DNA of 64,000 bases, taken from positions 124,001 through 188,000 of IMG/VR virus record IMGVR_UViG_3300037042_002125, one strand, 5' to 3'. Made by a program: the position numbers and the translations under genes. This document shows positions 11,060 through 63,648 of this stretch, one piece after another (position 1 is the first letter of the stretch; each line of letters begins with the position of its first letter). The notes beneath the pieces are model-generated. The model did no database searches, had not been told where the DNA came from, and saw only the letters and a list, made by a program, of their open reading frames with translations.

Positions 11060-18991
<7,932 letters not shown>

Positions 18992-43328: not shown

Positions 43329-43931
43329 ATGCTCATGGCTAACTTAACCAAAAAACCTTTACGAAGCTCTGGGGCTGCCTCGGCCGCCAGGGCTTTCTTG
43401 CCTCAGACAAAGGCCCCTAGTTCCATATGGGACAATGCAAAGCTATCTGACATTGGGAACAACTTTGAGATCATTAGGGAAGCGCCTATCCTCGAGGAGT
43501 ATTCTTTCCATAACCCTTTCCTAAGAGGGCAATCTGAGTTCATATTCTTTGTAGTTAAGCCTAAATACAAGGTCAAAGAGAAGAAGAAGGTAGTTACACC
43601 CTTAAACTTGAACAGCAAGTTGAGCAAACCTCAGAAGAGAAAGATAGCTAGAGCCATTGGCGATAACATTGAGGATTTTTCTACGTTCTTCATGGAGGAG
43701 ATTTTGCCAGTTAGTCTGGCAATATCGTCTGCTGGTCAGAAGGTAGACGAATTGATCCAACAATTGATAGACGATAAGGCAAACCTGCCAATGTCATTCA
43801 TCCAAGCTAAAGCTACGCAAGCCGTTTGCTTGCGGATCATTAGACGTATATCACAAAAGTTCAAGCTGACTAAAGACGAACAGCGTATGATGTTTAGGGA
43901 GTATCTACGTGAAAACGTTTTCAAAATCTAG
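43329..43931 (+). CDS. Hypothetical protein (possible terminase small subunit)
   Basis: Position immediately upstream of the large terminase only. Confidence 0.35.
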   Translation: MLMANLTKKPLRSSGAASAARAFLPQTKAPSSIWDNAKLSDIGNNFEIIREAPILEEYSFHNPFLRGQSEFIFFVVKPKYKVKEKKKVVTPLNLNSKLSKPQKRKIARAIGDNIEDFSTFFMEEILPVSLAISSAGQKVDELIQQLIDDKANLPMSFIQAKATQAVCLRIIRRISQKFKLTKDEQRMMFREYLRENVFKI

Positions 43932-46900
43932 TAGTGGGAGTGGGATAATCCTACCTCACTTTGCAAGCAAGAGTAAAAACTATGTTGACTCTCTGTTCAA
44001 CAATCCTGGTTCCGCATCTTTACCTTGGGAGGCTTTCCCTGATGACTATGATCCACTCGATCTTATAGCAGCAGACGGAGAGTTTGATCTTGCTAAAATG
44101 ATGGACAAGGCCGTAGACAGCATAACAGGTCTACCTAGAGATATCCGCCTACCAGAAGGTGATTTTCCAGAGGCTAAGAACTACTTTGATTATTGCGAAA
44201 ACTTTGTAGGTCCTGACACAAAATTTCCTTTCTCCCGTCAGATGTGGGCAGCTATTCATCTGCTTGCCGAATACTGCCCTAGGTGTTCTCACCCTAAATG
44301 GGAAAATATTTTCAACGTAGGCGTTGACGTTGACCCTCGCAACATACCCAACAACGTCCGCCTTCTCCACTATGGGAAATGCCCCAAGTGCAAGACAACA
44401 AAGGCTGAACTGTTTGCTAACAAGGAGCTAAACCTATACGTTGAAGCCGCTTGGTTATGGGGACAACGTTCTGGCAAATCAATCTTGACCGCTAGTCTCA
44501 CGAACTACCTTCTCCACAAGTACCTCAAGTTTCCAAAGATGAGTGCTATATGTGAGGGTATTCAATCCAGCACACCATTGACAGCTACATTCGTTGGCGT
44601 TCGTTTTGCGGACGCCATTGCTACCTTGTGGGAGCCAATCACTAAAGGTATACATGATAGCCCTTGGTTTAGGGAATATCATGCGATGATGGATCAATAC
44701 GGTACCAAACTTGGCATTGAGTTTTACAGATTTAAAGATCAGTACCTAAAATACGGCCACAAGAATTTAGAAATCTATCCAGCAGGCCCATCCAAACGTG
44801 CCCTACGTGGTCGTACTCGTTTCTTGTGCCTTACTGGCGATACTTTGGTAAATACAGACAGGGGTTTGGTAGAGATCAAAAACAATTTGCAGGGTCAGTC
44901 TGTAGACGTTTACATGACTAAAAATGCAGATATTACTTACCATGCATACTCGGGTAAAAAGGAAGTCTTTGAAGTAACTCTTGGTAACGGCTTATCTGTT
45001 ACTGGGTCTTCGGTGCACCCTCTCCTAACGTTAGACTTAGAGACATACAAACCTAAATGGACAAAAATCGAAAACTTGACCGTTAACGACTACGTCGTCT
45101 GTGGATTAGGTGGCACGTTTCCAGATGAGTTAACCTTGCCTTCCGGCGATCTACCGTCTAAAGCCAAGTATGAAGTAGCTATTGAGGAAATGGTAAAGCG
45201 TAAGACGTTCTATCTTGCAGATATAACTAAAGTATGTGGGTTGTCTCCAAACGTGTTAAGCATAACAACCTGCCAGTACACTAGGCTAGGTTTACTGACA
45301 AAACGTAAGATGTCACAGACTGGGACCTCTTTATTCTCAGTAGCTAAAGGCGTGACGGTCAACCAACTACTTGCAGCAAAGAAAAAAGGCTCTCAGCGTA
45401 TAACTCAAAACAGGAACAAGACACAATTCCCGCTATCAATGACCACAGAACTAGCAAGTGTTCTGGGGTACTTGGTAGCTGATGGGAAATATACAGAACA
45501 AGGGTTTGCTCAAGAACTAGGTTTTGGCACAACCTCAATACTTAAGGCTGAGGACTTTGCGGCCAAATTCCAAGATACCTTTGGGTGTGCACCTCGTAGG
45601 CGTACAGGTTATAAATCTGATGTAAAACTAGGAAAGGTGTATGGTTGTAGGATTGCGTACTCTGCGGTCAAAGACTTCTTAAAAACTATAGGACTAGTCC
45701 CCGCCGTTGCAAAGACAAAAGAAGTACCTTGGTCTATTCTACAGGCTGACCGAGACAGTGTGGTAGCTTTCCTGTCATCTGCTATTAGTTGCGATGGCCG
45801 AGTTCCTAATACTTTCAATAAAGGCCTAGGTAGAACGGTTAGTTATACGTCAACTAGCTTAAAATTGCTGCAACAGATGCAAATTTTATTCTTTAAACTT
45901 GGGTACCCGTGCCATATAAAACAGAATACTGACGGTACGTCTAAGGTCGTCCTTAAAGCCTACACTGCCAGCAAGTTTCTTGATGAGTACACTGGGCTAG
46001 AAAAACGCGACTGGCATATTAACCGAGAACGTACCGTACGTAGAAACTCTATGTCGTATTCAGAGTACCGTATCCCAGGTTTAGAACTTCGCAATACAAG
46101 TATGGTGTACTTTGTTCATACTCTAAAAGAGTTAAATGCTCACAGCCGAATAAATACTTCTGGACTAGGTCATCTTATAGACAAAAATTTTGTCTTTTCA
46201 AAAGCGAAGACCATTAAGTCAAAAGGTGTTAAGAAAACCTACGACATTAGTGTTGATAGTAAAAGTCACGCGTTTGTTGCCAACGGGATTGTTGTCCACA
46301 ACACAGGTCTCGATGAATTAGGTTGGTTCCCTATCTCAGGCGAGAACAGAGACCTTGAACGTGCAGACGCAGACGAAGTTCACACAGCACTTGACCGCTC
46401 CTTGCTTACGATGCGGCGCGAAGTGCGTACCTTGTACCGAAAGGGGTACAGCAATTTCATACCTGGTATCGCAATCAACATTTCCAGTCCTGCAGACGAG
46501 ACAGATAAGATGTGTAGGCTGGTCGAGGAGAATAGATCGAGCACTCGTGTGTTGGCGCTTCAGCTTGCTACGTGGGAAATTAGTCCTTTGTTTACCAAGG
46601 ACAACGAGGAAATTGCAGATGCATATTCTAAGAATCCAATAGATGCCGAGCGTGACTATGGGGCTAAACCTCCAATGAACGCGCGGTCGTTTATGGATAT
46701 GTCTGTGGCGGCCCGAGGGTTTAACGGACGTAATGCTGCTCACGTTACGCCTTTTGAGAAGACTATAAACGAGAAGGTCAGACGTGCGGCAGCTCTTGAT
46801 AGTTGGTCACCCTCAACTCCTCAGCCAGCGTCGGTGTTATCAATGGATGCAGGTCTGACAAACAATTCGTTTGCCATAACCATTATGAACTTGAACCAGA

Positions 46901-47625
46901 CTAAAGTTGGTGAGTTGATAAACACTAGAGTTCAAGTGCAGGTGGCGGTTGAGATTCAGCCGCGACCAGGGGTAATGCTTCACTATAGCAAAATCTACAG
47001 TGACGTTATCAAACCAATGATAAAACATTTCAACGTCCGCTTCATGTTCGCAGATCGTTGGAATTCTGTTGCTTTATTAGACACAGCAGAAGAAGATTTC
47101 AAACACATTGGATTAGTCGCCAAGCAGCACAGTGTCAAGTACCCCGATTTCTTGACCACCAGGTCATATTTAGAGGAAGGTAAACTTATCCTTCCTAAAC
47201 TTGAAATGGAATATGAGAAGATTCGACAAATTGATAGCTACCCCTCTTATTTTGAAGGTAAGCCAGCCGCTCATCTATTGTTCCAGTTTGCCACTGTACG
47301 TGATATGGGTAGTACAGTTATCAAAGGTGGACCTTACACAGATGACATTTTTAGGGCCTTGGTTCTAGGTGTAGGTCGTATTCTCAATCCGAAGATCATG
47401 GAAGAGATTCTAAAGATGGGAGTTGTCCTCAACCAAAGGAATTTCGGTGCCGTAACAATGGGGAGATCTTTTGGTATGTCTAGTCCAATAAACTACCTTG
47501 CGAATAGGGACCCGTCTAAACCCAATGTAGGTTCTACAATCCTATCTGGGTATTCTACTATTAGTCCTGTTGGGGGTTCTAACTTTGCAACCTCACAAGT
47601 TGTAAGAAGTTCTAGGACAAGGTAG
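43909..47625 (+). CDS. terL: Terminase large subunit with intein
   Basis: GTG start with AGGGAG RBS; WGQRSGKS Walker A; Walker B reconstituted as RFL/TGLDE; RNase H-like nuclease motifs (SMDAG, ADRW, TDDIFRA). Confidence 0.88.
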   Translation: MKTFSKSSSGSGIILPHFASKSKNYVDSLFNNPGSASLPWEAFPDDYDPLDLIAADGEFDLAKMMDKAVDSITGLPRDIRLPEGDFPEAKNYFDYCENFVGPDTKFPFSRQMWAAIHLLAEYCPRCSHPKWENIFNVGVDVDPRNIPNNVRLLHYGKCPKCKTTKAELFANKELNLYVEAAWLWGQRSGKSILTASLTNYLLHKYLKFPKMSAICEGIQSSTPLTATFVGVRFADAIATLWEPITKGIHDSPWFREYHAMMDQYGTKLGIEFYRFKDQYLKYGHKNLEIYPAGPSKRALRGRTRFLCLTGDTLVNTDRGLVEIKNNLQGQSVDVYMTKNADITYHAYSGKKEVFEVTLGNGLSVTGSSVHPLLTLDLETYKPKWTKIENLTVNDYVVCGLGGTFPDELTLPSGDLPSKAKYEVAIEEMVKRKTFYLADITKVCGLSPNVLSITTCQYTRLGLLTKRKMSQTGTSLFSVAKGVTVNQLLAAKKKGSQRITQNRNKTQFPLSMTTELASVLGYLVADGKYTEQGFAQELGFGTTSILKAEDFAAKFQDTFGCAPRRRTGYKSDVKLGKVYGCRIAYSAVKDFLKTIGLVPAVAKTKEVPWSILQADRDSVVAFLSSAISCDGRVPNTFNKGLGRTVSYTSTSLKLLQQMQILFFKLGYPCHIKQNTDGTSKVVLKAYTASKFLDEYTGLEKRDWHINRERTVRRNSMSYSEYRIPGLELRNTSMVYFVHTLKELNAHSRINTSGLGHLIDKNFVFSKAKTIKSKGVKKTYDISVDSKSHAFVANGIVVHNTGLDELGWFPISGENRDLERADADEVHTALDRSLLTMRREVRTLYRKGYSNFIPGIAINISSPADETDKMCRLVEENRSSTRVLALQLATWEISPLFTKDNEEIADAYSKNPIDAERDYGAKPPMNARSFMDMSVAARGFNGRNAAHVTPFEKTINEKVRRAAALDSWSPSTPQPASVLSMDAGLTNNSFAITIMNLNQTKVGELINTRVQVQVAVEIQPRPGVMLHYSKIYSDVIKPMIKHFNVRFMFADRWNSVALLDTAEEDFKHIGLVAKQHSVKYPDFLTTRSYLEEGKLILPKLEMEYEKIRQIDSYPSYFEGKPAAHLLFQFATVRDMGSTVIKGGPYTDDIFRALVLGVGRILNPKIMEEILKMGVVLNQRNFGAVTMGRSFGMSSPINYLANRDPSKPNVGSTILSGYSTISPVGGSNFATSQVVRSSRTR
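44827..46302 (+). mobile_element. Intein (492 aa) with LAGLIDADG homing endonuclease
   Basis: Starts CLTGDTLV, ends ANGIVVHN followed by Thr; LGYLVADG and FLSSAISCDG motifs. Confidence 0.93.
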
Positions 47626-56175: not shown

Positions 56176-56790
56176 ATGCTAATGCTGTTGCAAAAGACTT
56201 TCATGGATGACACAGGTACGCCATATGCGAATTACCCTGTTGTTATCACTGAGTGTGGTTCAAACAATCCTGTTCGCCTGTACACCCAATCAGGGTTGTT
56301 GATGGAACGTTTTGGAAATACAAAAACAGATTCAGACGGAATCATTTCTGTGTATGTGTCAGATGAAAAATTCTATGGCGCAAATCTTTTTAATCCCTCA
56401 AACGGGTTGAAGGTACAAAGTGTATACCGTCTTGACGTTGGTAATGGCGCTGACGTTCGCGTTGGCCCAACTGGCGCAGCCTCTACTGTTACTGGACCTA
56501 CAGGACCGTCTGTCACAGGACCGTCTGTCACAGGTCCCACTGGCGCAGCCTCTACTGTTACTGGACCTACAGGACCGTCTGTCACAGGACCGTCTGTCAC
56601 AGGTCCCACTGGTGCTGACTCAACTGTTCCTGGACCTACAGGTCCTCAAGGTGACTCGTTGACGGGACCCACTGGTGCTGACTCGTCAGTCACGGGACCT
56701 ACAGGTGCCGCAGGCAACGATGGGGCTACTGGCCCGACCGGTGCAGACGGTGTGGCTGGCCCAACAGGCCCAACAGGCGCAGCACCCTGA
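56176..56790 (+). CDS. Small collagen-like (GPT-repeat) virion-type protein
   Basis: ~95-aa beta-rich N-domain, then [18 protein letters not shown] repeats; exact 69-bp tandem repeat at 56470-56612. Confidence 0.8.
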
Positions 56791-57786: not shown

Positions 57787-58275
57787 ATGTCCAAAGCAAA
57801 TTCACAACCTGAGACAAGTAAATGGGTCCCACCTTTCCAAAGGGCAGACAGCATAACACTTGACGGGTGTCATTACCTTCTAAGTAGGTTCAATAATAAA
57901 TGGGCAGTATTGCACGATGGTGATTGGGCTATTCTCCCCGAAGAAAAGTACATTTTTGTCTACATGGGAAGAGAGACTAATGGACGGAATTCCAAGTGGA
58001 AAGTTATCCGTAAACAAGGTACACCCAGGCTTACATCTAGTAATGACGAAGAAGCAGAACTTAATACCGAAACCTCAGATGGTCTTAAGGACTTCCAAGT
58101 TGTGGCCAACATCAACAAACACAAAGATACCTTGCACATTAGGGCACACAATGCTCGCCATGCTGAGATGATTGCGTTCTGCGAGTTAAGCACTAGAATA
58201 AAATTGTCTGTGGCTACTCTACGGTCTATGTGCCTACCTGATTCGCTAAACATACAATTACAACCAGAAGATTGA
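57787..58275 (+). CDS. Hypothetical protein
   Basis: GGAGAG RBS; 162 aa. Confidence 0.6.
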   Translation: MSKANSQPETSKWVPPFQRADSITLDGCHYLLSRFNNKWAVLHDGDWAILPEEKYIFVYMGRETNGRNSKWKVIRKQGTPRLTSSNDEEAELNTETSDGLKDFQVVANINKHKDTLHIRAHNARHAEMIAFCELSTRIKLSVATLRSMCLPDSLNIQLQPED

Positions 58276-58280
58276 CCATC

Positions 58281-59957
58281 ATGTCCAAAAAAGCTTTTTC
58301 TCGTATCGCAACACTGGCTCGCGTAAAGCCGAAAAGCTTAGATAGTTTCATCTACCTTCTGTATGCAGCATCTGCAGTATTGGCAAAAGACGAGACATTG
58401 CCTAAGCTGGCACAGAACGTCACAGCTAAAGCAAAAGACGCGGCAGAGGTAGATGCAGAGCTTGGAACTAAAATTGTCCCAATGTTGGTTAAGATCGTTA
58501 AGTCAAACGACTATGATGAAGAAGAGCTGTCTAAAGATGTTCGCGAACTGAGAAAAGCAATTCGGCGTGACGTTGATACTGATGCACAGGTCAACCATGA
58601 TCACATTGATATGCTAAAGGCCCTTACTGCCTACATATCAAGCCGTGCTGAAGGTGCTCTGCGTAAGTTAATCAGCTTGGCTCCCCTTACCGAGGCAAAC
58701 GAGCTTATAGATGCTTTGACATTCAAGCCAAACTCGCAAAAGGAATTTCTCAAACCACTCGAAAAGATTGTCAATGCGTTTCACCGCAAGGGTACTACAC
58801 TTACTTCCGAAGAGCAGAAAGTACTCAAAGTCAAGTCTCCGAAGGTGCATAAGGAATATCTGCGGCTTCGCAAGGAGTTCAACAACGTCTGGAAAGATGA
58901 GCTACGCAACCTTATTAACAAGGCAGGTCGGCCAATGACTGACTTCCAGTATGCCCTTGACTACTTGAAAAGCCAAGGCATACATAATCCTTTGCCGCCA
59001 GATTTTGAGGGTAACGTAGATGCCAACGGCAAGTTCTATACCAAGACAGGCAAGCTAATTGCTAACGTACCTGGTGTAGGCTTCAAGATCGTAATGAATC
59101 CGGATTACGATCCCAAAGAAGATAACACCTACGTGTTTACTACTGTCAATGCCGAAGGAAAGGTAAGCCAGCATGTCTACACTACCGAGTACCGCAAGAA
59201 GACAACAGACGTTAAGTTCAAGAAGGTAGACGAGCTAGACGCTGTTATTGATAGCGTCCGCAAGAAGTGGATGAAATACGTCAAACAAGGTGGATCAAGT
59301 GTTCAGGCTGTAGCCAGCACGGTATTAGAGTTGATCTATCAATTTAGTGCTCGTGTAGGTTCAATGGGTAATTCTACTGCTGGTCAAGACACTTATGGCA
59401 TAAGCACGTTGCTATACAAGCAAGTCAAAGCAGGAAAGACTGGTATTCTTATAAAGTACCCAGGTAAGAAGGGCGTTGTCCAGTCTCACCTGTTGCAAGG
59501 CTCTACCGTTGAAGCTAAGTGGTTGATCCGTAACATTAAAGAATGTCTTGTTGATAAAGACCCAACAGACAGAGTGTTTACGTTTGATAACAACGGTAAA
59601 TTGTACCCAGTAACAGGCAATATATCTAACAAGTGGTTTGCCAAACTGGGTTCACCCGTTACAGTACACAAACTTAGGCACGTCAAAGGATCTAGATTGT
59701 TTGCCCAAGAGATTGCTGACAATGACAAGGTTATAAACAACCCCAACAAGCCGTTGAACCAATCTCAAGCAGATGCGTTGTTCAAACAAATGGCTACTAA
59801 GGTAGGTGAGTTGTTAGGTCACGTTACTGGCATTGGTAAACAACAGAAAGTTACGCCAATGACTGCGGTGCAGAACTACATATCACCTGCACTAATGATT
59901 GGTTACTATCAAAGACTCAATTTGAGACCGCCAAAGTTCTTGTCCAAATTTGAGTAA
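58281..59957 (+). CDS. DNA topoisomerase IB with long N-terminal extension
   Basis: Catalytic residues in order: ARVG (R), YGISTL, GKKG (K), HKLRH (R,H), QNYI (Y). Confidence 0.85.
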   Translation: MSKKAFSRIATLARVKPKSLDSFIYLLYAASAVLAKDETLPKLAQNVTAKAKDAAEVDAELGTKIVPMLVKIVKSNDYDEEELSKDVRELRKAIRRDVDTDAQVNHDHIDMLKALTAYISSRAEGALRKLISLAPLTEANELIDALTFKPNSQKEFLKPLEKIVNAFHRKGTTLTSEEQKVLKVKSPKVHKEYLRLRKEFNNVWKDELRNLINKAGRPMTDFQYALDYLKSQGIHNPLPPDFEGNVDANGKFYTKTGKLIANVPGVGFKIVMNPDYDPKEDNTYVFTTVNAEGKVSQHVYTTEYRKKTTDVKFKKVDELDAVIDSVRKKWMKYVKQGGSSVQAVASTVLELIYQFSARVGSMGNSTAGQDTYGISTLLYKQVKAGKTGILIKYPGKKGVVQSHLLQGSTVEAKWLIRNIKECLVDKDPTDRVFTFDNNGKLYPVTGNISNKWFAKLGSPVTVHKLRHVKGSRLFAQEIADNDKVINNPNKPLNQSQADALFKQMATKVGELLGHVTGIGKQQKVTPMTAVQNYISPALMIGYYQRLNLRPPKFLSKFE

Positions 59958-59977: not shown

Positions 59978-60022
59978 GAAAAAGGGGCTGTAGACTAAAA
60001 ATCTACAGCCCCTTTGTCGTTT
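59978..60022. terminator. Bidirectional rho-independent terminator
   Basis: Perfect 14-bp stem AAAGGGGCTGTAGA / TCTACAGCCCCTTT with a 7-nt loop, between convergent genes. Confidence 0.88.
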
Positions 60023-60032
60023 GCTTTTCTTG

Positions 60033-60140
60033 TTATGTGACAGCATCTCCAGACAATTTGTTCTCCCACTTGACTATCCTGTACGACAAATATATGGGAA
60101 GCCATACAAGGAGAGCCATGTAAATGTATTCACTCATCAT
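60033..60140 (-). CDS. 35-aa membrane peptide (not in ORF track)
   Basis: MMSEYIYMALLVWLPIYLSYRIVKWENKLSGDAVT; ATGA-coupled to the upstream ORF. Confidence 0.5.
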   Translation of the reverse strand: MMSEYIYMALLVWLPIYLSYRIVKWENKLSGDAVT

Positions 60141-60286
60141 TTCTTTTTCTCATAGAACTGGCGATTCCACATGTCGTAAGCATATCCTGCTATACGTGCC
60201 AACACGTACAGAACAATCAAGACACATACAACGATTATTAGACCGTTATCAAGCATCTCGATGATTCTGGTGAAAGTAGTTCCCAT
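60137..60286 (-). CDS. 49-aa membrane peptide (not in ORF track)
   Basis: MGTTFTRIIEMLDNGLIIVVCVLIVLYVLARIAGYAYDMWNRQFYEKKK; starts 1 nt after the upstream stop. Confidence 0.55.
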   Translation of the reverse strand: MGTTFTRIIEMLDNGLIIVVCVLIVLYVLARIAGYAYDMWNRQFYEKKK

Positions 60287-60287
60287 G

Positions 60288-60650
60288 TCAGGCCTCCTCT
60301 TTACCCTCTACCCCACGCACCATACGCCGTGCAGTCCTTACTTCGAGGTTCACCAACGCTTCTTCCATGTGTTGGATGGCTCGCTGGTTCTCATCGCAGC
60401 CAAATTTAGCATCCAAAAACTTTGTGCGGTGAATCAAGATCGCCAGCAAAGCCTCGTTGGTTAAGCCATTTACTCCAGATTTTGGAACTGGGCCGTATTG
60501 AAACTTGATCAGACATGAATCTTCGCCTAAAGCAACTTCGTAATAGTGTCCAGTTACGTTCGAAATAATCCCACTAGGGAAGAAGGTTCGTCCTGCAATG
60601 GCTGTTACGGTCACCCCATTGTGGTCTTTGTAAATTTGTGGATCTGGCAT
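60288..60650 (-). CDS. tad1: Tad1-like anti-defence sponge protein
   Basis: ATG 60650 with AGGAG RBS; GH.Y.V...IKFQ.GP.....NG...EALL.I...R......F...EN..A..H.EEAL..L..R...R..R.V.G matches the Tad1 pattern as I recall it. Confidence 0.72.
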   Translation of the reverse strand: MPDPQIYKDHNGVTVTAIAGRTFFPSGIISNVTGHYYEVALGEDSCLIKFQYGPVPKSGVNGLTNEALLAILIHRTKFLDAKFGCDENQRAIQHMEEALVNLEVRTARRMVRGVEGKEEA

Positions 60651-60663
60651 GGTGTAGGTTCTC

Positions 60664-61356
60664 CTATTTCTTTCCCATTGATACAAGTGATAAAAATTCA
60701 GCTTTAGCAGTGGTAGTCTTGAACACACCACTCAACTTGGATGTAACCGTATCTGAGCAGGCATCTTCTACCCCACGAGTACGGACGCACATATGTTCTG
60801 CCTCTATCAAGACCGCAACGTGTTCTGTTCCAAGAACAAACTTTAGTGTCTCACATATTTGGCTAGCAAGACGCTCTTGTATCTGCGGACGCCTGCAGAA
60901 AAACTCAACGATACGGTTGATCTTACTCAGGCCCAACACCTTGTCTTTGGCTATGTACGCCACGTGGGCGCAACCAATTATAGGAAGAATGTGATGTTCG
61001 CACGTGGAGTTGACAGTGATATTGCGTTCGAGAACCATCTCGTCTACTTGCATCTTGTTCTCGACAACAGTAGCCTTTGGGAAATTGTCGTAATCTAATC
61101 CCCAGAAGATTTCGTTGAGATACATCTTGGCAACACGCTTGGGAGTATCAGCCAAAGAGTCATCAGACAGATCCATACCTAAAGCCTGCAAGATACCAGT
61201 TACGTGATCTTGGATTGCCTGTAGCTGAACAGATTTTGTAACCTCTGCATTATTGCTCGGAAGCCTTGTCATTGGCGTTTCGATGCCTAGGCTTTTCAAG
61301 TGAGCCTCGACTCTGCCACCCAGGAATACATCTGCTTTTGCGTCGTCAGTTTTCAT
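60664..61356 (-). CDS. folE: GTP cyclohydrolase I
   Basis: [28 protein letters not shown] and HMCVRTRG motifs. Confidence 0.96.
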
Positions 61357-61373: not shown

Positions 61374-62294
61374 TTAGGCCATTGAGGCGTATAGATGCAT
61401 TTGGAGACACAGCCGGTAGCCCATATGCAAGGCGTAGTTGGCAGCGTACTCATGGTTTATTTGGTTCTCTTTCTGGTTGAGCAACCCTGGTGTCCAGAAA
61501 CTAATCACTTCGTCTACAGTAGAACGCTCATGCAGGCTAGGTGTGTATGTACCGTCTGCACCCTTCTTTGTAAGCCGCAGGATTTTCGACTGTTGTGGCA
61601 CATCGTTGTAGATGTTCATTGGGGATATATAGATTTCCCTGCCAGTGCGAGCCTTCCATTCTTGAGCCCATTGAGGTACGTTCCAGTACGGGCTGTCAAA
61701 ATCTTGCTTGACAACGAATTTCAAACACTGAACAGAATCTAGAACCTTATCGTTTGGTTTGAGGTACTCAGTAGGTACACCATTCTTCTCGCCACACTTG
61801 GGACTACATACAAACGTAACAAAGTCTGGCACTCTCGTGTTGAGCAAACCATTGCTTTCGATTTGGACATGCTTGTATGCAAACTGTTGCCGCATCAAGA
61901 ACTCATACAAGTTATCTTGCAGCAAAGGCTCTCCACCAGTGACGACCAATATGCAGCCGTAAGGCCCAAGCTTTCTGTCAAACTTTGTTTCCTTATCAAA
62001 GCTCTTAGGCAATACCCAAAGAGGTGCAGGAGTCCCGCCTTCATTCCAGTGATCGCATATGGTAGCGTAGGCTTTCGCCTCTATTTGCTCGTAGGTAAGC
62101 CAGTCACCTTGGTCAAAGAACGTGTCGCAGAAGTGACAATTGAGATTGCACTTAGCAAGACGTATGAACAAGGCAGGCATTCCTGCATAAGGTCCCTCGC
62201 CTTGTATTGTGAAAAACATGCTCGTCACGTACAGGGAATTCGCGGGTGCGTCTTTGAAGAACTTCTTGCCAGTTATTTCGTTAGTTCCAAACAT
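61374..62294 (-). CDS. queE: 7-carboxy-7-deazaguanine synthase (radical SAM)
   Basis: FFTIQGEGPYAG, CNLNCHFCDT, TGGEP, ESNG, SPK and QMH motifs. Confidence 0.93.
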   Translation of the reverse strand: MFGTNEITGKKFFKDAPANSLYVTSMFFTIQGEGPYAGMPALFIRLAKCNLNCHFCDTFFDQGDWLTYEQIEAKAYATICDHWNEGGTPAPLWVLPKSFDKETKFDRKLGPYGCILVVTGGEPLLQDNLYEFLMRQQFAYKHVQIESNGLLNTRVPDFVTFVCSPKCGEKNGVPTEYLKPNDKVLDSVQCLKFVVKQDFDSPYWNVPQWAQEWKARTGREIYISPMNIYNDVPQQSKILRLTKKGADGTYTPSLHERSTVDEVISFWTPGLLNQKENQINHEYAANYALHMGYRLCLQMHLYASMA

Positions 62295-62302
62295 GGTTCA
62301 TC

Positions 62303-63103
62303 CTATACAGCATCTTTGCTTGTCTCATATCGACCCTCAAATGCCTTGAGAGAGTTTGCAAGGGCGATCTCGTAGTTGTCACTTAGCCACTGTTTGATCG
62401 TTGCCAGATCAGGCGGCGTGGTTTGTTTGTCCAACCAGGCAGTAAGGAAGTAGTTGTCTTGGTTAGCCCCATCCCACAGCTTGAGATACCGATCTACGGC
62501 ATAGTACCCATACTTGAACGTACCTGCCTTGTACCCTTTGTCTTGGCGGAATTGATTCAGCAAAGCCTTTGCCATGTAGCGGGTGTAGAGGTTACGCAAG
62601 TCAAAGTCAATTGATCTTGAAAGGCTGAACAACAAAGACCAAGGGTTAAGGCCAAGCAACCCGTGTGCTTCCACGTACTCACTTGCGCTGTTCAAATTCA
62701 GGCTAGCCATTAGCATCTTTGCCAAAGACAAAGTCTTAACTTTATCCACAGACAAATCTGCAGACATTTGAAGGCTTCGGTAGATGCTCTCAATTGCTTC
62801 ATCGGCGTCTTGGCTATCAATCACTGATTGGCTGAGCATGAAGTGAACTGCGTCTACTATCTCCATTTTGCAGTTACCTAGGTCTTGCTTATCTCCTGAC
62901 CACCACTCGTAGCCGTAGCTGTTAACGAACTCACCGATCTCTTGAGAGGCTGCTAGGCTGTAATCAAACTCCTGGGTGCGGCCTTTGTTAAGCCAATCCT
63001 CGTTGTAGGCTTTGGTGTTCAAAGCAATCTGGTTAAATACCATTTCACGTATCATCGAATACGCTGGTGAGGTTTTGAAATCTTCGCCGAAGAGGTTAAC
63101 CAT
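62303..63103 (-). CDS. Dimeric (all-alpha) dUTPase family
   Basis: EIGE, WW, MEIVDAVHF, Y.AK..LN.FRQDKGY motifs. Confidence 0.8.
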   Translation of the reverse strand: MVNLFGEDFKTSPAYSMIREMVFNQIALNTKAYNEDWLNKGRTQEFDYSLAASQEIGEFVNSYGYEWWSGDKQDLGNCKMEIVDAVHFMLSQSVIDSQDADEAIESIYRSLQMSADLSVDKVKTLSLAKMLMASLNLNSASEYVEAHGLLGLNPWSLLFSLSRSIDFDLRNLYTRYMAKALLNQFRQDKGYKAGTFKYGYYAVDRYLKLWDGANQDNYFLTAWLDKQTTPPDLATIKQWLSDNYEIALANSLKAFEGRYETSKDAV

Positions 63104-63105
63104 GG

Positions 63106-63648
63106 TCAGTCCTTGTTGGTGTTTGAGATAAATGAGCTACGGCTCTTTGGAGTCTCCCACCAATCGACACGAGAGCAGGTAACCCCCAAAGCCTTCATCT
63201 TTATTGAGACTAAAGTGTGCATCCACTTTGCAAAATTCTCGCTCGTTGGTACAAAGTCTACAACTAGCATACCACCATACAGCTCTTGCAATAAAGGGGA
63301 CATTGAATCGTTTTCAACAGTCCATGCTACCTCCACTCCTTCCAGCTCTACTGGTTGTAATCTAGATGTTTCTGGGAATAGAATTAACCTTAGTGGATCA
63401 TTTCTGTCAATGACAAACTTGTGATCAATAAAAGTATTTAGCCACTTCTTAAGCCACTCCAAGTGCCTAAAATCTGTAACCATACCTCGCACCAACGTGT
63501 CTGAGCTTAAAAAGACTTGAACTTTTGCTTCATGGCCGTGCAGATGCCTACAGGCGCATTTCAAGTCTTCTGAAAATCTACCGTCTAATTCTTGACTCCA
63601 AACTCTATGGCCATAACAGAACTCAAAAGTCTTATCAATGTTGAACAT
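63106..63648 (-). CDS. queD: 6-carboxy-tetrahydropterin synthase
   Basis: F.YGHR, C..LHGH, DF, DH.F, PTSEN and WET motifs. Confidence 0.93.
   Translation of the reverse strand: MFNIDKTFEFCYGHRVWSQELDGRFSEDLKCACRHLHGHEAKVQVFLSSDTLVRGMVTDFRHLEWLKKWLNTFIDHKFVIDRNDPLRLILFPETSRLQPVELEGVEVAWTVENDSMSPLLQELYGGMLVVDFVPTSENFAKWMHTLVSIKMKALGVTCSRVDWWETPKSRSSFISNTNKD

What the first reader, a model, noticed from the sequence alone, without database searches (positions are those of the whole stretch)
60288..60650. Tad1-like immune-signal sponge co-transcribed with DNA-modification genes
Seen: motif-level match to Tad1 (IKFQ.G, G...E.LL.I...R, F...EN..A..H.EEAL, R..R.V.G). Established: Tad1 from Bacillus phage SBSphiJ7 sequesters Thoeris gcADPR, and homologues also bind CBASS cyclic nucleotides. 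Inference: this operon layers anti-restriction (deazaguanine) with anti-Thoeris/CBASS activity in a phage of a Gram-negative host, and pocket substitutions may change ligand range.
Basis: partly seen in the sequence, partly recalled or inferred. Interest (0 to 1): 0.7.

Follow-up and report, generated by a model that had tools for sequence, protein, structure and literature searches.

The report
Tad1-family immune-signal sponge gene
This 120-residue gene of an uncultured freshwater jumbo phage is a genuine member of the known Tad1 family of proteins that soak up bacterial immune signals; it is an ordinary new member, but it lacks the family's usual site for cyclic trinucleotides.

Summary
Window 60288-60650 (-) is a 120-aa ORF with its own Shine-Dalgarno site.

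Evidence that it is a Tad1 homologue:
- It matches solved CmTad1 (E 1.6e-11) and SBSphiJ7 Tad1 (49% identity over 73 aa).
- A family profile matches CbTad1 and CmTad1 over their full length (E 4e-18 and 6e-24).
- An AlphaFold model (pLDDT 92) finds only Tad1 structures (Z 11.7, 2.2 A over 109 residues).
- A homodimer is predicted (ipSAE 0.81, controls 0.00).

The gcADPR/cyclic-dinucleotide pocket residues N88, R105 and R109 are near-invariant. The pocket Phe is Leu. The two cyclic-trinucleotide contacts (CbTad1 R90, T97) are D86 and Q93, and the hexamer-interface Trp is N101. All these states are conserved in its clade.

The gene is packed into queD-NTPase-queE-folE-tad1-49aa, which ends at one strong terminator. 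This order recurs only in the phage's closest relatives. Homologues 61-67% identical sit in unrelated phages and in proteobacterial prophages, so the link to the que genes is incidental.

A divergent DpdA-like transglycosylase lies 73 kb away and no QueC was found.

Verdict: a new member of a known kind, with ligand binding untested. Interest is low to moderate.

The parts
60288..60650 (-). Tad1-family gene (120 aa, P0001). N-terminal antiparallel beta-sheet (about residues 5-50) and a helical hairpin (65-82, 86-112).
   Evidence: ORF and translation. PDB sequence matches. tblastn to SBSphiJ7 Tad1. Model pLDDT 91.9. Foldseek top 20 hits all Tad1. VIA Z 11.7. Predicted dimer.
60661..60665 (-). 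Shine-Dalgarno AGGAG, 10 nt upstream of the ATG. It overlaps the folE stop codon (TAG, 60664-60666).
   Evidence: Read directly from the sequence.
60664..61356 (-). FolE (GTP cyclohydrolase I), the gene immediately upstream.
   Evidence: Pfam PF01227, E 4.6e-62.
61374..62294 (-). QueE-like radical SAM enzyme (7-carboxy-7-deazaguanine synthase).
   Evidence: Pfam Radical_SAM. It is 42-48% identical to annotated phage QueE proteins.
62303..63103 (-). All-alpha NTP pyrophosphatase (dimeric dUTPase/MazG type) inside the que cluster.
   Evidence: Pfam PF08761, E 2e-17. phrog_173, NTP pyrophosphohydrolase.
63106..63648 (-). QueD (PTPS family), first gene of the cluster. The catalytic Cys motif C-x3-HGH is present.
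   Evidence: Pfam PF01242, E 8e-24. The motif is read from the translation.
60137..60286 (-). 49-aa ORF with one hydrophobic helix. Its ATG lies 1 nt after the Tad1 stop. Function unknown.
   Evidence: The ORF is conserved at the same place in a relative and replaced by a 71-aa ORF in another.
59981..60015 (-). Intrinsic terminator: 16-bp G+C-rich stem followed by a U run. It ends the cluster and faces the convergent topoisomerase IB gene.
   Evidence: Terminator scan. RNA fold z-score -5.4.

Best explanation
The gene encodes a free-standing Tad1-family sponge protein. It most likely forms at least a homodimer. It most likely captures a TIR-made ADP-ribose-derived signal (3'cADPR/gcADPR of type I Thoeris), and possibly cyclic dinucleotides, in the pocket lined by N88, R105, R109 and the C-terminal RGVEG lid. 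This would keep the host effector silent.

Unlike the Firmicute-phage Tad1 proteins that have been studied, it should not bind cyclic trinucleotides in the canonical way, because the two phosphate contacts are replaced by Asp and Gln.

It is made from the same transcript as the phage's queD-NTPase-queE-folE genes. It is an independent, mobile accessory gene that happens to sit at the variable 3' end of that cluster.

Shown here: homology, predicted fold, predicted dimer, residue states, gene order and the terminator. Inferred: ligand, oligomer above the dimer, anti-defence phenotype, co-transcription and host.
For: - **Sequence:** CmTad1 E 1.6e-11, phiKZ gp184 (Tad1) E 3e-9, CbTad1 E 0.005. 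SBSphiJ7 Tad1 is 49% identical over 73 aa. The family profile matches CbTad1 residues 3-124 and CmTad1 at E 4e-18 and 6e-24.
- **Fold:** pLDDT 91.9. The Foldseek top 20 are all Tad1, and the next hit has E 0.4. VIA gives Z 11.7 and rmsd 2.2 A over 109 residues to gcADPR-bound CbTad1.
- **Dimer:** ipSAE 0.81 against a best control of 0.00. The mark was reached by 20 of 30 solved homodimers and 1 of 23 monomers. The interface includes residues 78-79, 85, 87-88 and 104-106.
- **Pocket:** the equivalents of CbTad1 N92, R109 and R113 (mutations that abolish gcADPR and cGAMP binding; PMC10680739) are N88, R105 and R109. These are found in 150, 149 and 147 of 150 representatives and in all 120 close homologues.
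- **Mobility:** close homologues lie in unrelated phages and prophages, as expected for an autonomous accessory gene.
- **Family function:** diverse Tad1 homologues inhibit type I Thoeris and CBASS (PMC12393519).
Against: - No binding or phenotype data exist for this protein or its clade.
- The pocket Phe (CbTad1 F82) is Leu here and in 129 of 150 representatives. Its effect is unknown.
- The residues that build the hexamer and the trinucleotide site are all changed (D86, Q93, V100, N101, V104). The oligomeric state may therefore differ.
- About a quarter of the sponge homologues tested in PMC12393519 (19 of 84, all three families pooled) inhibited none of seven systems.
- The host is unknown, so it is also unknown whether it carries Thoeris.
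- The local Pfam scan does not report the Acb2_Tad1_hairpin family for this protein, although a precomputed table lists it.
Confidence: 0.65

Rival explanations
1. The protein has the Tad1 fold but a shifted specificity. It would sequester a different nucleotide signal (another cADPR isomer, His-ADPR, N7-cADPR, a cyclic mononucleotide or an unknown signal) rather than canonical gcADPR or cyclic dinucleotides.
For: The Phe-to-Leu change in the pocket and the complete replacement of the second site are both strongly conserved within the clade: D86 or E86 in 109 of 120, Q93 in 86 of 120, N101 in 118 of 120. Helix 2 is almost invariant across unrelated phages. Sponge families are known to shift ligands, and a quarter of tested homologues hit none of seven systems (PMC12393519).
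Against: The three polar pocket residues essential for gcADPR and cGAMP binding are invariant. phiKZ gp184, which also lacks the R/T/W residues (E86, N93, A101), is still described as blocking Thoeris and CBASS (PMC13282480).
Confidence: 0.2
2. The protein is an accessory factor of the 7-deazaguanine pathway. It would, for example, bind or carry a pathway intermediate, which would explain its conserved place after folE.
For: The order queD-NTPase-queE-folE-tad1-like is kept in relatives about 70% identical.
Against: Homologues 61-67% identical lie in contexts without que genes: beside HicAB in a lambda-like prophage, in an early small-gene block of a marine phage, and between tail-fibre genes. 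In Shewanella phage Thanatos-2 and Acinetobacter phage ABMM1 the homologue is also away from any que genes. In one relative another small ORF separates it from folE.
Confidence: 0.04
3. The protein is a virion-packaged protein, as suggested by 'putative structural protein' annotations in Bacillus phages and by capsid-borne phiKZ gp184. On this reading it is delivered with the DNA rather than made from this transcript early in infection.
For: phiKZ gp184 is a minor capsid protein whose Tad1 domain is released and injected (bioRxiv 10.1101/2025.11.23.690004). Several homologues are annotated as structural. Many representatives carry long N-terminal extensions.
Against: This protein is 120 aa, the bare Tad1 domain, with no N-terminal extension to anchor it in a capsid. 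It sits among nucleotide-metabolism genes, not head genes.
Confidence: 0.05

Closest known systems
Tad1 of Bacillus phage SBSphiJ7 (founding member; sequesters 3'cADPR/gcADPR)
   Same: 49% identity over the helical hairpin. Same domain size class. Conserved N, R, R pocket residues and RGVEG C-terminus.
   Different: SBSphiJ7 has F79, R86, T93, W101 and K104 in query numbering. The query has L, D, Q, N and V at these positions. The N-terminal sheet is barely alignable pairwise. The host is Gram-positive.
CmTad1 and CbTad1 (Clostridial prophage Tad1; PDB 8kbb-8kbh, 7uav, 7uaw, 8smd)
   Same: Full-length profile match and the same predicted fold. The equivalents of the gcADPR/cGAMP pocket residues N92, R109 and R113 are kept.
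   Different: These proteins are hexamers that bind two cyclic trinucleotides through R90/T97 (CbTad1) or R88/T95 (CmTad1) (PMC10680739). The query has Asp and Gln there, and the interface residues Q/E/M/W/K are E/E/V/N/V. CbTad1 F82 corresponds to Leu in the query.
phiKZ gp184 (Tad1 of a Pseudomonas jumbo phage; PDB 8y6v chain I)
   Same: A Tad1 domain in a jumbo phage of a Gram-negative host. It has an acidic residue at the R90 position and no Trp at the hexamer position (E86, N93, A101).
   Different: gp184 is 230 aa. [quoted passage not shown] The query is the bare domain, encoded in a metabolic gene cluster. gp184 has Tyr at the pocket aromatic position, and the query has Leu.
[quoted passage not shown]
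   Same: FolE, QueD and QueE plus a PF08761/MazG-type NTPase and a distant TGT/DpdA, with no QueC (bioRxiv 10.1101/2023.04.13.536721). QueE is 42% identical to that of ACP17.
   Different: Here the DpdA-like gene lies 73 kb from the synthesis genes. No DpdL was identified. The modification itself is unknown. The annotated stretches around queE that were inspected in ACP17 and in Dinoroseobacter phage R5C list no Tad1 gene; phiST was not examined here.

Membership tests
Tad1 (Thoeris anti-defence 1) sponge family | Significant sequence homology to experimentally characterised Tad1 proteins | tested here: met
   CmTad1 E 1.6e-11, phiKZ gp184 E 3e-9, CbTad1 E 0.005. SBSphiJ7 Tad1 tblastn E 6e-13 and BLASTP E 8e-21. 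Profile E 6e-24 and 4e-18 over the full length.
Tad1 (Thoeris anti-defence 1) sponge family | Fold: N-terminal antiparallel beta-sheet packed on two long C-terminal helices | tested here: met
   Predicted model only, pLDDT 91.9. Foldseek top 20 are all Tad1 (TM 0.69-0.78, probability 1.00), and the next hit has E 0.42. VIA Z 9.9-11.7 over 103-114 residues, against Z 7.4 or less for hairpin-only matches.
Tad1 (Thoeris anti-defence 1) sponge family | Homo-oligomer with ligand pockets formed in the dimer | tested here: met
   In silico only. ipSAE 0.81 against a best control of 0.00. The mark was reached by 20 of 30 solved homodimers and 1 of 23 monomers. The pass may partly reflect memory of solved Tad1 dimers.
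Tad1 (Thoeris anti-defence 1) sponge family | Polar gcADPR/cyclic-dinucleotide pocket residues (CbTad1 N92, R109, R113) | tested here: met
   N88, R105 and R109 in the query. They are present in 150, 149 and 147 of 150 representatives and in 120 of 120 close homologues. The role of these residues comes from PMC10680739.
Tad1 (Thoeris anti-defence 1) sponge family | Aromatic pocket residue (CbTad1 F82) | tested here: not met
   The aligned residue is L79; F78 is adjacent. Leu is found in 129 of 150 representatives, so it is the common state of this part of the family. This is a pocket detail of the solved proteins rather than a criterion of the family.
Tad1 (Thoeris anti-defence 1) sponge family | Hexamer (trimer of dimers) with a cyclic-trinucleotide site (CbTad1 R90, T97; CmTad1 W103). 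This is an accessory property, said to be altered in 6% of homologues. | tested here: not met
   D86, Q93 and N101 in the query. Only 13 of 150 representatives have R plus T/S, and 12 of those also have Trp (PMC10680739). phiKZ Tad1 also lacks these residues. The hexamer itself could not be modelled.
Tad1 (Thoeris anti-defence 1) sponge family | Sequestration of gcADPR and rescue of phage from Thoeris | not testable with these tools
   Needs ITC or gel shift and plaque assays.
Tad1 (Thoeris anti-defence 1) sponge family | Match to Pfam PF24729 (Acb2_Tad1_hairpin) | tested here: inconclusive
   A precomputed table lists PF24729.3 for this protein and most homologues. The local hmmscan and the six-frame search with PF24729.2 find nothing.
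Phage 7-deazaguanine DNA-modification system | CDG synthesis genes FolE, QueD and QueE | tested here: met
   Pfam matches. QueD keeps the C-x3-HGH motif. QueE is 42-48% identical to phage QueE proteins.
Phage 7-deazaguanine DNA-modification system | DpdA-family DNA transglycosylase (the signature protein) | tested here: met
   Met at the level of the TGT superfamily, and outside the window. The candidate is a 435-aa ORF at G000:C1:110541-111848. Its family alignment has invariant DSGGFQ, GxDS and CxCxxC...H motifs. The profile hits archaeosine TGT at E 1.3e-6. phrog_887 matches at E 1e-4, and atlas features score 0.95 to viral TGT clusters. The Pfam TGT and DpdA models themselves do not match. 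The subfamily was not determined.
Phage 7-deazaguanine DNA-modification system | QueC (needed for preQ0-type bases) | tested here: not met
   No PF06508 match in the 222-kb record, which is estimated 93% complete. This implies a CDG-derived base if DNA is modified at all.
Phage 7-deazaguanine DNA-modification system | Modified base present in virion DNA | not testable with these tools
   The phage is uncultured. LC-MS/MS of DNA is needed.

The most novel reading that the evidence does not exclude
The clade to which this protein belongs may be a functionally distinct Tad1 subfamily. Its members occur in phages and prophages of freshwater and other Pseudomonadota, carry L79/D86/Q93/N101, and have an almost invariant helix 2. 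The clade would have given up the cyclic-trinucleotide site and the canonical hexamer contacts. It would use the conserved acidic/polar surface for a different assembly or a second ligand, possibly an immune signal not yet described.
Probability: 0.15. Interest if true: 0.6.

Novelty: new member of a known kind. Interest (0 to 1): 0.3.

Why it matters
The gene adds one more Tad1 homologue from an uncultured freshwater jumbo phage, so its practical value is mainly annotation.

Two points go slightly beyond that. First, residue mapping predicts that this proteobacterial-phage clade keeps the gcADPR/cyclic-dinucleotide pocket but not the cyclic-trinucleotide site. That is a clean, cheap biochemical test of how far the dual anti-Thoeris/anti-CBASS role of Tad1 extends.

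Second, the phage seems to combine a CDG-type deazaguanine system (FolE, QueD, QueE, an NTPase and a distant DpdA, with no QueC) with a signal sponge on one transcript. This illustrates how counter-defences accumulate at variable ends of phage operons.

Tried and rejected
- **Nucleotide similarity:** megablast of 6 kb around the gene against 50,697 phage records found nothing.
- **Pfam on the Tad1-like protein:** the local Pfam scan gave no family even at E 10. The PF24729.2 six-frame search also found nothing.
- **DpdA and QueC by Pfam:** the TGT (PF01702), DpdA (PF23859) and QueC (PF06508) models did not match the record. tblastn with the DpdA-like protein of Dinoroseobacter phage R5C found nothing. 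The DpdA candidate emerged only through PHROG 887, atlas features and its own family profile.
- **Other sponges:** no Tad2 (PF11195) was found in the record.
- **Transcription:** the sigma-70 promoter scan gave fewer hits than shuffled sequence, and none upstream of queD. No promoter was assigned.
- **RNA evidence:** one metatranscriptome run holds a single 151-nt contig inside folE and nothing over the Tad1-like gene. This neither supports nor refutes transcription.
- **Phylogeny:** a tree of 166 Tad1 domains (109 columns) was largely unresolved (7 of 163 branches well supported). The history of the trinucleotide-site states could not be read from it. Only the five-member group holding the query is supported, at 99.
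- **Literature gaps:** the supplementary tables of PMC12393519 and the 2022 Tad1 paper are not held. I could not check whether this protein or a close relative was among the 20 tested Tad1 homologues.
- **Gene start:** the longer GTG start at 60731 was rejected because it overlaps folE and has no counterpart in homologues.

Full report
**What is there.** The minus strand of window 60288-60650 carries a 120-codon ORF ending in TGA. An AGGAG lies 10 nt upstream of its ATG and overlaps the TAG stop of the preceding gene. A longer GTG-started version would overlap that gene, and its extension has no counterpart in any homologue, so the 120-aa form is the gene. The gene evolves under purifying selection: dN/dS is 0.12 and 0.45 against two relatives, and synonymous sites are saturated against the rest.

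**Family.** The local Pfam scan is silent, and PHROG 2428 carries no function (E 7e-31). A direct sequence search of PDB finds Tad1 and nothing else of note:
- CmTad1 (8kbb), E 1.6e-11
- phiKZ gp184 (8y6v chain I), E 3e-9
- CbTad1 (7uav), E 0.005

tblastn against phage genomes hits the gene annotated Tad1 in SBSphiJ7, the founding member, at 49% identity over 73 residues. The family is large: 3,201 50%-identity clusters at E up to 1e-3. A profile of 110 members matches CbTad1 over residues 3-124 and CmTad1 at E 4e-18 and 6e-24. Homology therefore covers the N-terminal sheet as well as the helical hairpin.

**Fold and assembly.** An AlphaFold2 model built on that alignment is confident (pLDDT 91.9). 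It shows six strands followed by helices 65-82 and 86-112. The 20 best Foldseek matches in PDB are all Tad1 chains (TM 0.69-0.78), and the next match has E 0.42. VIA-align gives Z 11.7 and rmsd 2.2 A over 109 residues to gcADPR-bound CbTad1; unrelated hits match only the hairpin. A two-copy prediction passes its controls: ipSAE is 0.81 against 0.00, a mark reached by 20 of 30 solved homodimers and 1 of 23 monomers. The pass may partly reflect memory of solved Tad1 dimers.

**Binding sites.** Li et al. (PMC10680739) showed two things for CbTad1. It binds gcADPR and 2'3'-cGAMP in one pocket (F82, N92, R109, R113), and it binds cyclic trinucleotides at a hexamer-dependent site (R90, T97; CmTad1 R88, T95, with interface residues Q98, E99, M102, W103, K106). 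The mapping below uses the gap-free helix-2 alignments.

| Site | CbTad1 / CmTad1 residue | Query residue | State in the family |
|---|---|---|---|
| gcADPR/CDN pocket | N92 | N88 | 150 of 150 representatives; all 120 close homologues |
| gcADPR/CDN pocket | R109 | R105 | 149 of 150 representatives; all 120 close homologues |
| gcADPR/CDN pocket | R113 | R109 | 147 of 150 representatives; all 120 close homologues |
| gcADPR/CDN pocket | F82 | L79 | Leu in 129 of 150 representatives |
| Trinucleotide site | R90 | D86 | D or E in 109 of 120 close homologues |
| Trinucleotide site | T97 | Q93 | Q in 86 of 120 close homologues |
| Hexamer interface | W103 (CmTad1) | N101 | N in 118 of 120 close homologues |

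Only 13 of 150 representatives combine R with T/S at the trinucleotide site, and 12 of those also have the Trp. SBSphiJ7 Tad1 is canonical (F, R, T, W). phiKZ gp184 reads Y, E, N, A. I therefore predict that the cADPR/dinucleotide pocket is retained and canonical trinucleotide binding is lost. The helix-2 surface is nevertheless almost invariant within the clade, so it is doing something. A tree of 166 domains was too poorly resolved to trace these changes.

**Context.** Five further ORFs on the same strand flank the gene:
- QueD (63106-63648), upstream
- a dUTPase_2/MazG-type NTP pyrophosphatase (62303-63103), upstream
- a QueE-like radical SAM enzyme (61374-62294), upstream
- FolE (60664-61356), immediately upstream
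- a 49-aa hydrophobic ORF (60137-60286), downstream, starting 1 nt after the Tad1 stop

Gaps between these genes are 1-17 nt. The only strong terminator is a 16-bp hairpin with a U run at 59981-60015, shared with the convergent topoisomerase IB gene. Co-transcription is thus the simplest reading, but public RNA data are too thin to show it, and no promoter was recognised.

The same gene order recurs in metagenomic relatives whose Tad1-like protein is about 70% identical. The small ORFs around it vary. Homologues 61-67% identical lie elsewhere:
- beside HicAB in a lambda-like prophage
- in an early block of small genes of a marine phage
- between tail-fibre genes of a 266-kb phage

In Shewanella phage Thanatos-2 and Acinetobacter phage ABMM1 the gene is likewise unrelated to que genes. 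The gene is therefore a mobile accessory cassette, and its position after folE is a lineage accident rather than a functional coupling.

**The phage and its host.** The window is bases 124001-188000 of a 222-kb IMG/VR record estimated 93% complete. The record is found in lake-water and sediment metagenomes. It encodes a myovirus-type baseplate wedge subunit. Its portal is 35-40% identical to those of jumbo phages of Ralstonia, Vibrio, Achromobacter, Xanthomonas and Pseudomonas. Prophage copies of the same Tad1 clade occur in Polaromonas, Ferribacterium, Hydrogenophaga, an uncultured betaproteobacterium, Acinetobacter lwoffii and a Piscirickettsiaceae MAG. A Gram-negative host, probably a proteobacterium, is therefore likely but not shown.

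**Is the operon a DNA-modification operon?** FolE, QueD and QueE make 7-carboxy-7-deazaguanine (CDG). QueC is absent from the record, and the Pfam TGT and DpdA models find nothing. However, a 435-aa ORF 73 kb upstream (G000:C1:110541-111848) belongs to a family with several TGT hallmarks:
- invariant DSGGFQ, GxDS and CxCxxC...H motifs
- a profile match to archaeosine tRNA-guanine transglycosylase at E 1.3e-6
- a weak match to the phage DpdA PHROG
- language-model features of viral TGT clusters
- a 54%-identical homologue in Burkholderia phage BCSR5

The gene kit (CDG synthesis, a PF08761 NTPase, a distant DpdA and no QueC) resembles the phiST, ACP17 and Campylobacter-phage type described by Hutinet et al. 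(bioRxiv 10.1101/2023.04.13.536721). Deazaguanine modification of the phage DNA is thus plausible, but the base is unknown.

**Comparison with what is known, and novelty.** Tad1 homologues are numerous: 1,587 non-redundant ones in IMG/VR v3, of which 20 were tested (PMC12393519). AntiDefenseFinder detects them, and one is already known in the Gram-negative jumbo phage phiKZ. This protein is a new member of a known kind. Its modest points of interest are the predicted loss of the trinucleotide site, which the literature says is altered in only 6% of homologues but which is missing from most of its own neighbourhood of the family, and its co-location with a CDG-type deazaguanine cluster. Binding, oligomeric state above the dimer, phenotype, host and transcript structure all remain to be measured.

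Noticed in passing
G000:C1:110541-111848 (outside the window; L011:6541-7848): A 435-aa ORF belongs to a divergent TGT/DpdA-like family with invariant DSGGFQ, GxDS and CxCxxC...H motifs. It is the likely DNA transglycosylase partner of the FolE/QueD/QueE genes. The Pfam TGT and DpdA models miss it. Its neighbours are homologues of Acidovorax phage ACP17 gp124 (a glycosyltransferase) and gp125.
   Followed up: partly
window 62303-63103 (-): A dimeric-dUTPase/MazG-type NTP pyrophosphatase sits between queD and queE. A similar gene sits in the deazaguanine cluster of Cellulophaga phage phiST. Its substrate is unknown.
   Followed up: partly
whole record G000: No QueC homologue was detected. The deazaguanine pathway would therefore stop at CDG, or a derivative made by an unrecognised enzyme.
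   Followed up: partly
window 60137-60286 (-): A 49-aa ORF with a single hydrophobic helix starts 1 nt after the Tad1-like stop. It is conserved in one relative and replaced by a 71-aa ORF plus a 159-aa AAA_33/APS-kinase-like ORF in another. This marks the 3' end of the operon as a variable spot.
   Followed up: partly
window 58272-59957 (+): A eukaryotic-type topoisomerase IB gene (PF01028) lies convergent to the operon and shares the hairpin terminator at 59981-60015. The arrangement is conserved in relatives.
   Followed up: no
window 43909-47625 (+): A 1238-aa ORF contains an intein splicing domain and a LAGLIDADG homing-endonuclease domain. The host protein of the intein was not identified.
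   Followed up: no
window 11060-18991 (+) and 56176-56790 (+): A 2643-aa protein has collagen triple-helix repeats and a C-terminal S74 intramolecular chaperone, so it is a giant fibre. A separate 204-aa ORF is made of GPTG-type collagen-like repeats.
   Followed up: no
L015/L016 6001-6339; L022; L025: Close homologues of the Tad1-like protein (about 50-64% identical) lie in prophages of Betaproteobacteria and of Acinetobacter lwoffii. One of them sits directly beside a HicA/HicB toxin-antitoxin pair upstream of the terminase gene.
   Followed up: partly
window 60288-60650 (protein P0001): A precomputed annotation lists Pfam PF24729.3 (Acb2_Tad1_hairpin) for this protein and its relatives. The local PF24729.2 model finds nothing. 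This looks like a difference between model versions and could cause the gene to be missed by routine annotation.
   Followed up: partly
window 60904-61054: A single 151-nt contig from a sediment metatranscriptome matches folE exactly. It is too little to tell transcription from carried-over DNA.
   Followed up: yes
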